DNA from: Pocillopora damicornis
Lineage: Eukaryota
DNA length: 64,000 bases
Assembly: GCF_003704095.1 (NCBI RefSeq)
Contig: NW_020847516.1
Coordinates: 310,001-374,000, forward strand
Reading direction: 5' to 3'
This document shows, one piece after another, positions 1,577 through 7,500 of the stretch. The notes beneath the pieces were generated by a model, which saw nothing but the letters and a program-made list of their open reading frames with translations, was not told the DNA's origin and did not search any database. The translations under genes were made by a program, and so were the position numbers. Within the stretch, counting starts at the first letter, position 1. Every line of letters begins with the position of its first letter.

Positions 1577-4500
1577 ATGGCGACCCATAGTGAGTCTGAC
1601 TCTGTCCCACATTTCTCAGACATGGATTCCCCTGGAAGCTCTGTTTCCTCTTCTTTGCAAAGAGAATACGAAGAGCTTCTTAAGTACGCTGTTGTTACAC
1701 CGAAAATTCAAGTTGTTCCAAGTGTGTACGAGCCATGTATTCCTTCGAAAGATGATAGTAGCGCTGCCTTCATTGAAACAAACGACAGCAGCTCTACGAC
1801 TTCGAAAACTACGTCGGTGTCGACTCAAAGTTCCCAACCAACAACAGAGGAATCGCATTTAGTCGATAAAGAAGAAGTGAAGAAACTTTCGGGAACCCCC
1901 TCTCTCAAAGTGTCGTTTCAAGGACAGGGATCAATAGCTCGAGATTCTCTGCTTCGATCAGGTAATTTCTAGACATCTATATTCAGTTACAAACGTTAAC
2001 TTATTAAGAACTTTGTGGTAAGCTACAGGGGTACGTATGCACTAACTCTACCCTTAACTCAGAGCATGTGTTATCATGAATTATCTTCTCATAAAATGAT
2101 AAAAGCTAAAAGAGGAAATTGAATTAAATTCGTTTGTGCGGCGAAAAATGTGTGCAGGTTCAGAGCTCAATTTTTCAACTCCTACGTTTACGTTAGTTTC
2201 CTAGCTTTGCAAGCATGAAGTGAAAACAAAGTTGCAAAGGATGAGCGCGCATAAACCTCGATATATTTCTGTTTTCAGCTGTGAAGAGATACTGCACTAA
2301 GCAATTGATATTTTGGAAGCGATGAAAATGAAACTCGGCTAACTTCATTACTTGCAAATTTCTCTCTTGTGCCTTAAGAAGTACATGCCAGAAAGGCCTT
2401 TCTGAAAAGCAATTGTTAACTGCATTTTAATTACACTGTAGAGGGAGGCATACTTACCCTTTAAGCATAGCCCTCAACCATTCCATCCTTTTTTAATTTT
2501 TCCTTCTATAACTTCTGTATTAGTGGTGAAGAGCATCCTTGAAGACTTGAACATATGTTATACATATCGTTCTTAGAAGCTGTTAACCATGCTTAGGAAT
2601 TAGATTGTTTTGATTTTGGACTGGATGAAAATTAGTTATATTAAAGAAAATATTTATCTAACCTGGTGACAAATGTGTTGCTAACTGAAAAATATTCCTA
2701 AACATTATCTACATGTAATTTTAACAATTGACTCATTTATATACTGATAAATGTTTTTCAGAAACAGATGCTGTTTCACCAGTCATAGCAGAAGCTGAAC
2801 ATGAATCATCATTATCTCACACTGCTGATGAGTCACCAGACTCCCCAGTGCCATCCTCACCTGTAATAGATGCTGACCTGGCCAGAATGGAGGCATTATT
2901 GGATAACTGGTGTTTGGATCTCAAGAGAAATGTTTTGGTATGTGACCTACATGTCTGTACTGATTTTAAGACTTCAAATGTTGAAGTGAAGATTTATTCA
3001 TGACCAAATCAAATTTACAAATTGACCAAATGAGGATTGAGTAAAAGTGACTTTGTGACAATAATTATAATATTTTCTTATCCCAGTGTATACCCTATGG
3101 GCGTAAGTGAGAATGTACTTCATTCATGTTCATGGCCATGTGAAATTTTTCCTTCTCCAAACAGGCTGAATTTGCACAGTGTAAAATGGGGTTATTTGAA
3201 AAACAGAAACAGCTTTTGATGCAGGAGAAAAGAAGGTACTGTAACAGTTTTTGTATGCATGTAATACATGAAGAAAACATCTCAGGTGCTTCATTTTTTT
3301 CTTTGTTCCAATCAAAAAGCTGTACTGTGTAGAAAACTCTCACAACAAACAGACACTATTCAAGATAATGATATCATTTAATATCATGTAATAACATAAT
3401 ATTTATGCAACTGTTTAATAAATGTTAAACTAGATTTAAATCTTAGAAAGTAAAAAAATCCTGCTTTATTACCACTTCTAATTACCAGTACTCCTAATTA
3501 CAATGTACAATGTACATTGTACAGTTAGGAGACAAAGTGAAATGAAAATTATTTAAGGTAGAAGAGGTTGTTTATGTGAATTGCACTTTGTAGAATTTGA
3601 GTAATATGATTCTTTTATGTCAGTAATCAGTACTTTAGCCTAACTTCTATCAACTGAGATACTGCTCAGGTACATGTNNNNNNNNNNNNNNNNNNNNNNN
3701 NNNNNNNNNNNNNNNNNNNNNNNNNNNNNNNNNNNNNNNNNNNNNNNNNNNNNNNNNNNNNNNNNNNNNNNNNNNNNACTTTGCACTCTTGTTGTTTCTC
3801 AAGTTAATGATTGCATCTTGGATTTTTATCCATGAAAATGGTATTTCACGCCCAATAGTTGTCTTACACTCTTCAGCTTCAGCAATTATTACTCTCTTGA
3901 GATTTTGAATCCCAGTATCATTTTTTCCATAAGTATTCTCTACAGGGAAGTACAAGAGGTTGTCTTCTTCATTCAGAACAAGCTCATCGCTAAAGGAATC
4001 CAAAATATTCTGCCGCAGGTGCTTATCAATTTTGTTCAAACAAAGTTTTTCCATATGGCCCCTGTGTGTTCCAACAAGGAAGATGGGTGTCCTTGATGAG
4101 GCCTTACTGCAAATGGATTCCATCCAGAATTTAAGTCTTTCGATTTTTGCTGCCATGTTTCCAAAATTGTCATCTGCAAAGTTTGTCATGTTGAAGAGCA
4201 CAAGGTAGATGGCATTGTCTCTCATGAAGATATGATGGTAAGCATAGTACTCTTCATCTCCTGAGAAGTCTAATATTTTTAGTTTAAGACTGGAAAATGT
4301 AGAATTTAGAGCCCTTCTCAACTTCTGGAAATTCAGTGCTATCTTTTCAATAAAGATAAAAGTGAAAGTAGCTTGCGTTTCCCTTGCATCTAGAGTATTA
4401 TAATTGAAAATAGAAAACAGAGAATTATATTCACTGTACAAAGTGAGGCATGCTGACACTGAAAATATTGCTGAATACATTTTAAGGGAACAGAAGTGAA

Positions 4501-7500
4501 TAAAATTTTCAGATAATTTGTCAAAGATGATATAAAACAATAAGATCGAACTGATAGCCTGCATGTTTACCAGGGAACACAAAGCCTGAGTAACTCTAAC
4601 GGTTACGAGGAAAGCGAGAGGAATCACTAAGAAATGAAGAATGTAACAATAATGGAGGGTTGTCATGTTAGTTGATATTTGTAGCTGAAAAATGGAACCA
4701 AAACTAAAGCCACACATTACAGGAATTAAAAACCATACGAGGCACGGCAGAAAAGGTAGTGGATAATTGAACTTTGCTTGACCAGGGACAGATGATTCAA
4801 TCCCTTTCCAATTACTGATTTGAAAATAGTGATTACAGGACAAATGATAGCTAATGTCACAGATCAGGATAGTAACAATCGCTATGTGGAGTACCCAGAT
4901 CAACAGGTAATCATGAAATATTATTAATCTAATTGATGGGTCAAACTTTTGACACTCCAATTCTTTAAAGGGCCCTGCAAGCACATGTGCAGCTCCTAAT
5001 CCCATTAGAATTCGAGGGAGCACGGCCATCAACCAAGCGAGTTTAAAAAATTCTGGATGCTCTGATCGCTGAGGCTGTAGCCAAATTTGCAAAGTAAATA
5101 CAGCAATTGAATATGCATAGAAACTGACAGACACTGATGCGAAAGCCCCAAGCCATACGATCGAAATTATCCAGGATATACGTAGTAAGAAGAACATGAG
5201 GTGTACCACTGCTGACATTGCTGATGTTATTTCATCATCGATAATGACTTCGACTCCTGCAGGGCCAAACATCAAACCGTGGTACAGAGCAGATTCCTGG
5301 AATCGAGTAAAGCTTCCAAATTTAAGACCATCGTCGGCGTTGAGTCTTTTCCACCTCCGGTCAACTAAACTCATTTCCACACCTTTAGTCCTTGGTTCAG
5401 CTGCATCAAACGGTTGCCCTGTAAGCGATTTTGTTAAACTGGTCTTGCCAACTCTAGCATCTCCTAGTATTAAACACTGGCCTTGGAATACATCCTGTTT
5501 GTATGATTCTGAGTCGTTTTGTTCGCTTTTAAAACCAAGGTTTCTCAGAATTTGTCTATAAGACTCTTGTCCACGTCCATCCGGTAAGCGTCTCTCGAAC
5601 TGTAACTGGGACATCACCTCAGATGCCGTTTCCAAGGTGTGATCGTTCGTAAGACGAATACGTTGCACATCTAAGGCCATCTTTTCATTTCTTTGTACAA
5701 GAGCAGGGTGCTTTCATTGATAGACGCGACGCACACAGTTCTATTACCCTGGAGCTGACTCCCGGAAGCTGTTCACGTGACCATATCTCGCCAAATGGCA
5801 AGGACCTTGCCGTCATGGTCTACTGATCACTTTGTTTTCAGGGAAATAGACTCTTGCTGGGAATCTGTTACTTACTCAGGCGTTTTTGAGCTTCATTGAA
5901 CGTTTATTTATTAAAGCTTTTTTACCCCACAGACACGGCAGTGAAATGCACAAGCTGATGAATGAGATGGAGAGTCAAAAAGAGTTGTTACTGACTTATG
6001 AACAGACCCTGACACACAAAGACTCTATTGTTACCAACATCACACACGCTATTCACAAACAGGTTTGTTGTACATTTTTGTCTTGACAGTAACTTACTTA
6101 TCTTCGCGGGTCGCGAATGGAATAATTAAGTTGAATAGGATGAAATGGATGATTACAAGAGACAATCTGCTATGTTTTTACAATGAGAGCCATCTATTGA
6201 GAAATCAAACTATAGCGGCATGTCCTTGTGTGTTTATTTCATTTTCAAAACAGATTTACTCGTTTGGTAACTAGTTGATGAACAAATAGAAATCAAAATG
6301 GGCTTTAAACTTTTCAACCACAGTACAATTTAAACTATTCGCACTTTTTTTTATTTCATTCCTCTTATTTGTTAAGTTCTGTTGTCCAGCTTATGATATT
6401 AAAGTCGAACAAGGGTTGAAAAAGGCCGGATTCTGAAAGAGCATTGTCCATCTTATATCAGGACAAGCTTTTTGTTATGTTTTTTTTTGTTGGTAGCATC
6501 CATATCGTTACTTCCACATACCTCCAACACTTTACGCATTGCTCAACTGAAGGGGAAAAAGAGACAAGTGCGTTGTGATTATGCTTGAATTTTTCACCCT
6601 TGACGCGCGACAATTTACCCGCGGCGATTTACTAGTGACAATTTATTCACGACGATTTGATTCTCCCGTTTGGCACTCCCGCGATTTGATGTAATTTCCG
6701 AAGGTTAACAAACTTGTATGTTTTTTTCATAGAGGGAAAGAAATGAACTTATGAAGGCTTTTACCTTGTGGAAAATCAGACACTGCGATGAAAAAAGAGA
6801 GGTCAGTTCAGGAACCCTGACGAAATAATTGTAGGACAGTATTCATAGACGCCTGTGCACGGGATTGAAATTTAGAAGTCTCTCTTAAACCTTTGGTACC
6901 TTATAGCAATATTTATGATTACAGATATTGATAATAAACCAACTGTATCTTCCCAGTTGTAATCAGTTCAGACCAGTAGAACTTCCACTTTGCACCTTAA
7001 CACCCCGTATTTTTTTTTGTGACTACATGTTTATTACCTTCCACCCAAATCGTCTTAGTGCACATCACACCATTATTTCCTCACACATTTCAGTTCGGTC
7101 AATTTTCTGATGGTCATCATGTTGTTTCTTTTCAGGGTTTTGCATCCAAACTTGCCGGAAGACATTACAAACACGCTTTAAAGTCACGTGCCTGGAGTGC
7201 ATGGCGGTCTGTTATTGAATCCAAATGGAAACAACGAGTGGAAAAAGCATGTCAGGTTATTTGATCTGTTTGTTATTGTCAATCGTGTTGACTGTTTGTT
7301 TGGCTTTCAGATGGTCCGGTATTCAATTGGTGTTTAGGGACCAAGTATTGTGAAGAGGGATTTTAATTCGTCCACGAACTACATGTAACTTTTTCTATTT
7401 TTTCTGAAGGCGAAAGCTCAAGACGTGTGTGTCAAGTTGACGGAAGACTATGAAAGTCGTCTCGCAACAGTATGTTTTATCGTGTCTTTTTTTCCTTGTA

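What the first reader, a model, noticed from the sequence alone, without database searches (positions are those of the whole stretch)
3778..5680. Roc GTPase domain split in two by an ~8-pass transmembrane insert
Seen: P-loop and switch I (aa 73-102) are separated from G3/G4/G5 and the COR start (aa 469 onward) by ~365 aa. That stretch holds about eight hydrophobic segments (roughly aa 157-178, 180-200, 212-235, 252-275, 308-331, 343-362, 366-386, 401-416; nt ~5218-4433). No LRR, ankyrin or death domain precedes the Roc. Known: Roco proteins (LRRK1/2, DAPK1, MFHAS1) are soluble. Inference: an even number of TM helices would return both halves of the G domain to the cytosol, giving an integral-membrane Roco with a membrane bundle wired into the switch region. 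This could be a receptor-, channel- or transporter-coupled GTPase in one chain, for example in immunity or at a symbiosome/lysosome membrane. I know of no described protein with this layout, but I could not search.
Basis: partly seen in the sequence, partly recalled or inferred. Interest (0 to 1): 0.85.

Follow-up and report, generated by a model that had tools for sequence, protein, structure and literature searches.

The report
Coral Roc GTPase split by membrane bundle
A stony-coral gene encodes a relative of the Parkinson's-disease protein LRRK2 whose GTP-binding switch domain is cut in two by eight predicted membrane-spanning helices, a conserved and transcribed layout that no paper found here describes and that could tie a GTP switch directly to a membrane device.

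Summary
Window 3779-5680 (-) is one open frame of 634 codons that ends at a 100-N gap.

- **Split Roc domain.** Strand beta1, the P-loop, switch I and strand beta2 lie at aa 66-110. Strand beta3 with motifs G3-G5 starts at aa 464.
- **The insert.** About 350 aa lie between the halves, in the beta2-beta3 (interswitch) hairpin. They include eight predicted long hydrophobic helices.
- **Not an intron.** PolyA-RNA contigs from four studies cover it without a gap or splice.
- **Conserved family.** The same layout (about 870 aa, Roc half, 8 helices, Roc half, COR) recurs as an intronless multigene family. Every named member comes from stony corals, in seven genera. This genome has at least four copies.
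- **One G domain.** Structure prediction places both halves in one Roc fold (LRRK2 Roc Z 10.9). A two-chain test scored 0.88 against 0.02 for the best control.
- **Orphan insert.** It matches no Pfam family, PDB sequence or PDB fold, and has no relatives outside this family.
- **Motifs.** G1-G3 are invariant, but G4 lacks the guanine-specifying Asp in every member.

I read it as an integral-membrane Roco switch whose interswitch is wired to a membrane bundle. Its function is untested. This is a new variant of a known kind; interest 0.75. The scan had not reported it before on other DNA.

The parts
3779..5680 (-). Readable part of the coding sequence (aa 1-634) of the membrane-split Roc-COR gene. 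It is a single exon, and the frame runs into the assembly gap.
   Evidence: ORF list and sequence; tblastn of family member P0001 matches its aa 1-640 only here, at 97% identity; gapless RNA contigs.
5501..5680 (-). N-terminal conserved region of about 60 aa (one strand plus three short helices in the model). No known domain.
   Evidence: Conserved in the family; AF2 pLDDT about 70-80; no Pfam hit.
5327..5500 (-). Roc N-half: beta1, P-loop (G73-S81, nt 5438-5464), alpha1, switch I with G2 Thr98, and beta2.
   Evidence: Pfam Roc first stretch; aligns to Rab29 residues 9-52 and to C. tepidum and M. barkeri Roco; G1 invariant and G2 Thr in 60/62.
5225..5326 (-). Cytosolic linker before helix 1: a short helix and a predicted beta-hairpin.
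   Evidence: AF2 secondary structure in both models.
4403..5212 (-). Eight predicted transmembrane helices. TM1 5144-5212, TM2 5078-5128, TM3 4967-5056, TM4 4817-4912, TM5 4673-4753, TM6 4571-4660, TM7 4502-4558, TM8 4403-4486.
   Evidence: Hydropathy; the same eight helices in two AF2 runs; no PDB fold, PDB sequence or Pfam match; relatives only inside this family.
4769..4786 (-). Conserved P-G-Q-x-K-F motif in the TM4-TM5 loop, predicted to be cytosolic. It is the best-conserved element of the insert and a candidate coupling loop.
   Evidence: Pro in 58/62 and Gly in 61/62 sequences; short strand in both AF2 models.
4292..4402 (-). Conserved cytosolic strand plus basic helix after TM8, leading into beta3.
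   Evidence: High conservation and the highest K+R density of the region; AF2 strand and helix.
3851..4291 (-). Roc C-half: beta3 and G3 D-F-S-G (nt 4253-4270), switch II, G4 T-H-R-G (nt 4058-4069), G5 region and alpha5.
   Evidence: Aligns to LRRK2 residues 1387-1474, E 7e-9; Pfam Roc second stretch; motif counts.
3779..3850 (-). First ~24 residues of the COR-A domain. The rest of COR is not in the window.
   Evidence: In family members Pfam COR-A begins at the matching residue. Roc-COR structures match the full model at Z 13-17.
3678..3777 (.). Assembly gap of 100 N that truncates the gene.
   Evidence: no COR-coding sequence elsewhere in the window.
5681..5960 (-). Transcribed upstream sequence contiguous with the coding region, probably the 5' UTR. 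Its last 30 nt overlap an exon of the opposite-strand host gene.
   Evidence: RNA contigs lie on 3778-5960 (X1) and 3778-5773 (X12).

Best explanation
This is the 5' 634 codons of an intronless, transcribed gene for an ~870-aa Roco-type (Roc-COR) protein that is an integral membrane protein. All named members of its family come from stony corals.

Anatomy. A ~350-aa segment is inserted into the beta2-beta3 (interswitch) hairpin of the Roc G domain. The segment holds eight transmembrane helices, short juxtamembrane beta/alpha elements, and a conserved P-G-Q-x-K-F loop predicted to be cytosolic. The eight spans return the chain to the cytosol. There the two halves reassemble into one G domain, followed by COR.

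Proposed mechanism (inferred). G1-G3 are invariant, so the domain most likely still binds a nucleoside triphosphate with Mg and switches conformation. Beta2 follows switch I and beta3 leads into switch II. TM1 and TM8 are therefore mechanically tied to both switches. Nucleotide state would move the bundle, or the state of the bundle (lipid, ion or small ligand in the membrane) would set the nucleotide state. COR would supply the nucleotide-dependent dimerisation known from other Roco proteins, pairing two bundles. No other effector domain is present, so the membrane bundle is the likely input or output device.

Shown in silico: the architecture, transcription, conservation and compatibility of the two halves. 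Inferred: nucleotide binding, coupling, dimerisation and cellular role.
For: - **Reality of the gene.** Continuous ORF with Roc motifs on both sides of the insert.
- **Transcription.** Gapless polyA-RNA contigs from four studies lie over 3778-5960, 3778-5773, 3778-5607 and 4262-5336, with no indel or joint in the insert. Depth is zero in the neighbouring intron of the host gene, 6144-6500.
- **Conservation.** More than 200 homologues have 100% coverage and the same layout. They are contiguous ORFs on genomic contigs. Named ones are only Scleractinia.
- **Paralogues.** This genome holds at least four copies.
- **Eight helices.** Both AF2 runs give the same eight.
- **Cytosolic flanks.** The flanks of TM1 and TM8 are rich in K and R.
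- **Possible disulphide.** A Cys pair on the predicted outer face co-occurs: 48 with both, 0 and 3 with one, 11 with neither.
- **One G domain.** Both halves superpose on LRRK2 Roc over its whole length (Z 10.9, rmsd 2.5, model residues 71..616). Roc-COR structures match at Z 13-17. In the two-chain test, N-half against C-half with GTP and Mg riding along scored ipSAE 0.88 against 0.02 for the best of three controls; that mark was reached by 51 of 78 solved complexes and 2 of 108 mismatched pairs. The three runs agree in at least 72% of contacts and the partner's pLDDT is at least 58. Beta1 pairs with beta3 and beta4, and the P-loop touches G3, G4 and G5.
- **Position of the insert.** The N-half aligns to Rab29 residues 9-52 and the C-half to LRRK2 from beta3 onward.
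- **Selection.** G1, G2 and G3 are invariant or nearly so. dN/dS is below 1 everywhere, 0.35-0.82 in the insert and 0.10-0.37 in most Roc-half comparisons.
Against: - **G4.** The guanine-specifying Asp is absent in every member (T-H/Q-R/K-G/R/E). GTP specificity, and perhaps tight binding, is uncertain.
- **Model confidence.** AF2 confidence is only moderate (mean pLDDT 64). It falls below 50 at the P-loop and both switches in the full-length model.
- **Two-chain test.** The pass may reflect the model's memory of the G-domain fold. The calibration held no ligands.
- **Topology.** No dedicated topology predictor was available. Per-sequence hydropathy counts vary from 5 to 9, and positive-inside statistics for the internal loops are weak.
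- **Insert conservation.** The insert is the least conserved part, with no invariant charged residue inside the membrane. That fits a passive anchor as well.
- **RNA.** Contigs do not give the strand, and the gene lies antisense in an intron of another gene.
Confidence: 0.5

Rival explanations
1. Passive anchor. The eight-helix segment only fixes a conventional Roc-COR switch to a particular organelle or plasma membrane. Signalling goes through cytosolic partners of Roc-COR, with no allosteric link between the switches and the bundle.
For: The insert is the least conserved region (mean top-residue frequency 0.45 against about 0.75). It has the highest dN/dS. No invariant polar residue lies in the membrane and no known transporter or channel fold matches. 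A same-genome paralogue (L005) tolerates a disordered hydrophilic insert of ~130 aa at the same site, so the site may simply be permissive.
Against: A terminal single helix would be enough for anchoring. Eight helices of conserved number and length, a nearly invariant P-G-Q loop and conserved Gly packing motifs suggest a defined fold under selection. Placement between the two switch-flanking strands makes mechanical independence unlikely.
Confidence: 0.25
2. Pseudo-GTPase scaffold. The split Roc fold is kept for structure, for example to clamp TM1 to TM8 or to dimerise through COR. It no longer cycles GTP.
For: The G4 Asp is missing family-wide. The residue after the G3 Gly is Asp in 57 of 62 sequences; LRRK2 has Arg at this position and, from my knowledge, Ras has its catalytic Gln there. 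AF2 is unsure of the P-loop and switch regions.
Against: G-x4-G-K-T/S, the switch I Thr and D-x-x-G are invariant or nearly so across lineages only 35% identical. That is hard to explain without phosphate and Mg binding. Some members carry Glu at the G4 Asp position (T-H-K-E, T-H-C-E).
Confidence: 0.15
3. Artefact or non-membrane reading. The hydrophobic stretch is an unspliced intron, an assembly chimera, or a buried soluble helical domain rather than membrane spans.
For: The gene sits inside an intron of another gene, and RNA contigs carry no strand information. Two RefSeq models from Pocillopora verrucosa lack 130-135 aa of the insert.
Against: A stop-free frame of ~1,050 nt in DNA that is about 36-44% G+C across the insert. 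The same frame is kept in over 200 homologues on independent contigs, with dN/dS below 1. RNA contigs retain it in four studies while the adjacent intron is silent. Mean hydropathy of the helices is 1.4-2.4, typical of membrane spans.
Confidence: 0.03

Closest known systems
Roco proteins (LRRK2, LRRK1, C. tepidum and M. barkeri Roco): the Roc-COR tandem
   Same: Roc G domain by sequence (PF08477 E 6.5e-16; LRRK2 Roc E 7e-9). The Roc-COR fold matches (LRRK2 Z 17.3, M. barkeri Roco2 Z 16.0, C. tepidum Roco Z 13.1). The LRRK2-like T-H start of G4 is shared.
   Different: The G domain is interrupted by ~350 aa with eight membrane helices. There are no LRR, ankyrin, kinase or death domains. The G4 Asp is absent. 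The Roco reviews read here mention only soluble or peripherally recruited proteins.
Same-genome paralogue L005 (contig C1630), and P0080
   Same: Closest relatives found without a membrane segment. They have the same P-loop and switch I sequence style and a long insert at the same beta2-beta3 site. L005 also has G4 T-H-S-G.
   Different: Their inserts are ~130 aa, hydrophilic and Ser-rich or acidic, probably disordered, with no hydrophobic helices. They suggest the site was already permissive before a membrane bundle arose there.
Arf-family interswitch toggle (comparison from my own knowledge)
   Same: In Arf GTPases a register shift of the beta2-beta3 interswitch passes nucleotide state to a membrane-binding element. 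Here the same hairpin is continuous with TM1 and TM8.
   Different: Arf has an intact hairpin and a peripheral amphipathic helix, not an integral bundle. This is an analogy, not homology of mechanism, and it was not tested here.
FeoB (G domain fused to a membrane transporter domain; from my own knowledge)
   Same: One chain combines a small-GTPase-like domain with a polytopic membrane domain, and is thought to couple nucleotide state to transport.
   Different: In FeoB the G domain is intact and N-terminal to the membrane domain. No FeoB Pfam family hits this protein.
G-alpha helical-domain insertion, and membrane-anchored large GTPases such as atlastin and mitofusin (from my own knowledge)
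   Same: G-alpha shows that a G domain tolerates a large insert next to switch I. Atlastin and mitofusin show GTPases permanently anchored by paired helices.
   Different: The G-alpha insert is soluble and lies before switch I. Atlastin and mitofusin helices lie outside the G domain.

Membership tests
Roco (Roc-COR) proteins | Roc-type Ras-like G domain | tested here: met
   PF08477 E 6.5e-16, 59 bits against a cutoff of 27, in two stretches. LRRK2 Roc E 7e-9. LRRK2 Roc fold Z 10.9.
Roco (Roc-COR) proteins | COR domain directly C-terminal of Roc | tested here: inconclusive
   The window keeps only about 24 residues after Roc before the N gap. In full-length family members, PF16095 COR-A scores 25-31 bits, below the 35.3 cutoff. 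Structure nevertheless matches Roc-COR of LRRK2, LRRK1 and bacterial Roco at Z 13-17. The feature is met for the family and cannot be read in this copy.
Roco (Roc-COR) proteins | G1 P-loop, G2 Thr and G3 D-x-x-G | tested here: met
   G-x4-G-K-T-S invariant, Thr in 60/62, and the D and G of G3 in 62/62.
Roco (Roc-COR) proteins | G4 [N/T]-[K/H]-x-D with the guanine-specifying Asp | tested here: not met
   T-H-R-G aligns to LRRK2 T-H-L-D. Gly occupies the Asp position in 60/62 sequences. No Asp was found there in the ~180 longer members with a readable G4.
Roco (Roc-COR) proteins | Contiguous G domain (about 40 aa from P-loop to G3; this figure is from my knowledge) | tested here: not met
   The spacing has a median of 388 aa and reaches 416 at most in the family.
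Polytopic integral membrane proteins | Several segments of ~20 aa hydrophobic enough to span a bilayer, in even number so both flanks lie on one side | tested here: met
   Kyte-Doolittle windows of 1.6 or more. Eight family-conserved peaks. Eight helices in two AF2 runs. Per-sequence counts are noisy, 5-9.
Polytopic integral membrane proteins | Experimentally shown membrane insertion and topology | not testable with these tools
   Needs fractionation, glycosylation mapping or a solved structure.
Known membrane folds or families (transporters, channels, receptors, FeoB) | Sequence or structural match of the insert to a described family | tested here: not met
   Pfam: nothing for the window copy, and only single weak hits (best E 0.013) among 13 members. 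PDB sequence profile: 0 hits at E up to 10. Foldseek best E 0.42 with TM-scores 0.09-0.25. VIA best Z 8.5, within the helical background. Atlas: no usable hit. No internal repeat.

The most novel reading that the evidence does not exclude
A single-chain, nucleotide-gated membrane device. The Roc switch would directly open, close or oligomerise its own eight-helix bundle through the interswitch and COR dimerisation, acting as a channel, a transporter or a membrane-perturbing immune or cell-death effector specific to stony corals. To my knowledge this would be the first G domain with a transmembrane domain inserted inside its fold. A Cys-His-Cys-His tetrad near the predicted outer leaflet in the main clade could be a metal or redox site.
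Probability: 0.25. Interest if true: 0.9.

Novelty: new variant of a known kind. Interest (0 to 1): 0.75.

Why it matters
- **G-domain tolerance.** It would show that the Ras-like fold can hold a whole polytopic membrane domain inside its interswitch hairpin. That makes it a natural split GTPase and a natural experiment in how the switch regions pass force to an attached module.
- **Roco and LRRK2 research.** How the Roc-COR GTP cycle is turned into output is still debated. Here the only candidate output is a membrane bundle, which can be assayed directly by flux, conductance or structure in nanodiscs.
- **Coral biology.** All named members of this multi-copy family come from stony corals, and the membrane part evolves fastest. 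That profile is typical of immune, symbiosis or environment-sensing genes, in a group where Roco-type modules are also found in other unusual architectures.

Tried and rejected
- **Intron or artefact: rejected.** Gapless RNA contigs, a silent neighbouring intron and conserved ORFs argue against it.
- **Homology of the insert to a known family: none found.** Tried Pfam on the whole protein and on 13 inserts, a PDB sequence profile, Foldseek and VIA on an insert-only model, the ESM Atlas, and a profile search of 1.84 billion representatives. That search gave 33 hits, all the same architecture or fragments.
- **Internal 4+4 or 2+2 duplication of the bundle:** hhalign probabilities of 0.3% or less.
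- **Positive-inside rule on internal loops:** only weakly in favour of the N-in/C-in topology, so not used as main evidence.
- **Per-sequence hydropathy peak counting:** too noisy (5-9) to fix the helix number.
- **Splice sites at the short Pocillopora models:** I looked for them at the boundaries of the 130-135-aa deletions, using related loci. This was inconclusive because the loci are not the same genes.
- **Literature:** eight searches and five papers read. No description of a membrane-split Roc was found. The library lacks most subscription-journal papers, so this does not prove absence.
Contacts between the P-G-Q loop and the G domain could not be measured.
- **The N gap was not filled.** The COR part is described only from family members.

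
Full report
**1. The observation**

On the minus strand, window 3650..5680 is one open frame. Codons 1-634 (nt 3779-5680) are readable. A run of 100 N follows at 3678-3777. Pfam finds only Roc (PF08477, E 6.5e-16) and Ras, each in two separate stretches, and no LRR, ankyrin or death domain.

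- P-loop at G73-S81.
- Switch I Thr98.
- G3 D-F-S-G at 471-474.
- G4 at 538-541.

Kyte-Doolittle hydropathy in 19-residue windows exceeds 1.6 repeatedly between aa 153 and 386.

**2. Is it an intron or an artefact?**

Contigs from four polyA-RNA runs, each from a different study, lie on the locus without a gap or indel:
- 3778-5960 in X1, with 6 differences.
- 3778-5607 in X10.
- 3778-5773 in X12.
- 4262-5336 in X5.

No joint skips the hydrophobic part.

The gene lies antisense inside an intron of a plus-strand gene. That gene has an exon ending near 3233, an exon at 5931-6062, and a next exon starting at 6733. Contigs carry no strand information, so host pre-mRNA had to be considered as the source. 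The next intron of the host gene (6144-6500) has zero depth in all four runs, which argues that the coverage belongs to the nested gene itself. Contigs drop rare variants, so minor spliced isoforms are not excluded.

**3. Conservation**

The first protein search returned 81 hits. Most are 850-960 aa long and cover 100% of the query, down to 35% identity. A profile of distant members returned 131 more at E below 1e-20.

Every hit that carries a name is a stony coral: Stylophora pistillata (PFX14864.1, 'putative serine/threonine-protein kinase pats1'), Pocillopora verrucosa, Oculina patagonica, Desmophyllum pertusum, Montipora capricornis, Acropora millepora and A. muricata. These include Acropora and Montipora on one side and Stylophora and Pocillopora on the other, which by my knowledge of coral phylogeny belong to the two major scleractinian clades. 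Many unnamed hits come from ENA records labelled TARA metagenome scaffolds.

Ten members that I fetched as DNA are single uninterrupted ORFs, so the family is intronless.

This genome holds at least four copies:
- The window copy.
- A full-length paralogue about 12 kb away on the same contig and strand (L002, 41% identical, 854-aa frame).
- L003.
- L004, which has one in-frame TAA between Roc and COR.

The window copy lacks its COR part because of the gap. Family member P0001 (97% identical) matches the window only over its aa 1-640. COR is described below from family members only.

**4. Where the insert sits**

By sequence, aa 68-111 align to Rab29 residues 9-52 (beta1 to beta2). They also align to the Roco proteins of C. 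tepidum and M. barkeri. Aa 464-556 align to LRRK2 1387-1474, from beta3 to beyond G4.

The insert therefore lies after switch I and beta2, in the beta2-beta3 interswitch hairpin. The P-loop to G3 distance has a median of 388 aa in the family. From my knowledge it is about 40 in ordinary small GTPases.

**5. Structure predictions**

AF2 on P0001 with a 62-sequence alignment gave mean pLDDT 64.5 and pTM 0.58. It shows eight long helices with pLDDT 70-88. Confidence is low at the P-loop and both switches.

An insert-only model, built from 13 sequences taken by DNA reference, gave the same eight helices. In window numbering they are 157-179, 185-201, 209-238, 257-288, 310-336, 341-370, 375-393 and 399-426.

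The full model matches Roc-COR structures:
- LRRK2, Z 17.3.
- M. barkeri Roco2, Z 16.0.
- LRRK1, Z 15.2.
- C. tepidum Roco, Z 13.1.

It also superposes on the isolated LRRK2 Roc domain over that domain's full length (Z 10.9, rmsd 2.5 A, 117 residues aligned, model residues 71..616). So the two halves sit together in the model.

As a controlled test I folded the N-half (P0001 62-160) and the C-half (440-640) as two chains, with GTP and Mg riding along:
- The score was 0.88 against 0.02 for the best of three controls.
- That mark was reached by 51 of 78 solved complexes and 2 of 108 mismatched pairs.
- The three runs agree in at least 72% of contacts, and the partner's pLDDT is at least 58.
- The interface is the canonical G-domain core. 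Beta1 (76-79) lies between beta3 (476-477) and beta4 (497-501), and the P-loop touches G3 Asp477, G4 residue 542 and G5 residue 588.

The tool warns that such a pass may come from memory of a known fold, and that its calibration held no ligands. What it shows is that the halves are compatible with a normal G domain, not that they bind.

**6. Topology**

Both Roc halves must lie on one side of the membrane, so an even number of spans is needed, and eight are predicted.
- The flanks before TM1 and after TM8 are the most K/R-rich stretches of the region. This fits a cytosolic location.
- Internal-loop charge statistics favour the N-in/C-in topology only weakly.
- Two Cys (P0001 249 in the TM3-4 loop and 351 at the start of TM6) fall on the predicted outer face. 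They co-occur: both in 48 sequences, only one in 0 and 3, neither in 11. This fits a disulphide, although the sequences are related and the pattern may reflect few evolutionary events.
- In the main clade these Cys come with two membrane-embedded His (271 in TM4 and 355 in TM6) at similar depth. The full Cys-His-Cys-His tetrad is present in 33 of 62 sequences.
- No dedicated topology predictor was available. Simple per-sequence peak counts vary from 5 to 9.

**7. What the insert is**

It has no Pfam match, no PDB sequence match at E up to 10 and no Foldseek match (best E 0.42, TM-scores 0.09-0.25). No VIA match rises above the helical background (best Z 8.5). There is no usable Atlas hit and no internal repeat.

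A profile of the insert, searched against 1.84 billion representatives, found only 33 proteins. All have the same architecture or are fragments of it.

Extramembrane loops are short, so there is no ectodomain. The best-conserved element is a P-G-Q-x-K-F motif in the TM4-TM5 loop, which is cytosolic under the N-in topology (Pro 58/62, Gly 61/62). The strand-plus-basic-helix segment just before beta3 is also well conserved.

The insert evolves faster than the Roc halves but is still constrained. In six pairwise comparisons, dN/dS is 0.35-0.82 for the insert and 0.10-0.37 for the Roc halves in all but one comparison.

**8. The GTPase motifs**

G1, the G2 Thr and G3 are invariant or nearly so. G4 is T-H-R-G, with Gly aligned to the Asp of LRRK2's T-H-L-D. 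Across about 180 longer members with a readable G4 the motif is T-[H/Q]-[R/K]-[G/R/E], and the Asp never appears.

Phosphate and Mg binding therefore look selected for. Guanine specificity is open.

**9. Origin**

A same-genome paralogue (L005) has the same style of P-loop and switch I. It carries a hydrophilic, Ser-rich insert of ~130 aa at the same site and has G4 T-H-S-G. P0080 has an acidic insert there.

So the hairpin was already a permissive site in this Roc clade. The membrane bundle is a derived version seen so far only in named stony corals. I did not test it.

**10. Mechanism and rivals**

My best reading, at 0.5, is an integral-membrane Roc-COR switch:
- The interswitch hairpin is continuous with TM1 and TM8.
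- Rearrangement of switch I and switch II on nucleotide binding and hydrolysis would be passed to the bundle, or the reverse.
- COR would provide nucleotide-dependent dimerisation, as reviewed for other Roco proteins.
- The P-G-Q loop is a candidate coupling loop.

This is inference from the anatomy. Three rivals remain:
- **Passive anchor (0.25).** It fits the weak conservation of the insert.
- **Pseudo-GTPase scaffold (0.15).** It fits the missing G4 Asp.
- **Artefact or non-membrane domain (0.03).**

**11. Novelty**

The sequences are in public databases as uncharacterised proteins. Eight full-text searches and five papers read turned up no description of a Roc, or any G domain, split by transmembrane helices. 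From my own knowledge, membrane-bound GTPases (FeoB, atlastin, mitofusin, SR-beta, Miro, GIMAP) all keep the G domain intact.

I class it as a new variant of a known kind (Roco), with interest 0.75.

Noticed in passing
window 3204-3233, 5931-6062, 6733-6762 (+): RNA contigs show a spliced plus-strand gene: an exon ending near 3233, an exon at 5931-6062 and a next exon from 6733. The Roco gene lies antisense inside its intron. The Roco upstream transcribed sequence overlaps exon 5931-5960 by about 30 nt.
   Followed up: partly
L002 (same contig, ~12 kb beyond the window start), L003, L004: Three more membrane-split Roc paralogues in this genome. L002 is a tandem copy on the same strand, 41% identical with an 854-aa frame. 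L004 has an in-frame TAA between Roc and COR and may be a pseudogene or a sequencing error.
   Followed up: partly
L005:1357-2517 (-): A Roc paralogue with a hydrophilic Ser-rich insert of ~130 aa at the same beta2-beta3 site and G4 T-H-S-G. It suggests the insertion site was permissive before the membrane bundle arose.
   Followed up: partly
window aa 243, 265, 345, 349 (nt ~4952, 4886, 4646, 4634; P0001 residues 249, 271, 351, 355): A Cys-His-Cys-His tetrad near the predicted outer leaflet, present in 33 of 62 family members. The two Cys co-occur almost perfectly. It could be a disulphide plus a His pair, or a metal site.
   Followed up: partly
P0085 and P0224 (Pocillopora verrucosa RefSeq models): These models lack 130-135 aa of the insert (about TM3-TM6, or TM2-TM5). 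One is labelled isoform X3. They could be real exitron splicing, shorter paralogues or model artefacts.
   Followed up: partly
P0017 and P0059 C-termini: Some family members carry an extra Cys-rich tail of ~90 aa after COR that the ~870-aa members lack.
   Followed up: no
window 3835-4065: One X10 RNA contig shows a 229-nt skip with only 26 nt on the shorter side. It is probably a paralogue or an assembly artefact.
   Followed up: no
window 5696-5698: Family member P0001 starts six codons upstream at an ATG that reads GTA in the window. The family consensus begins at the window's own ATG (5678-5680).
   Followed up: no
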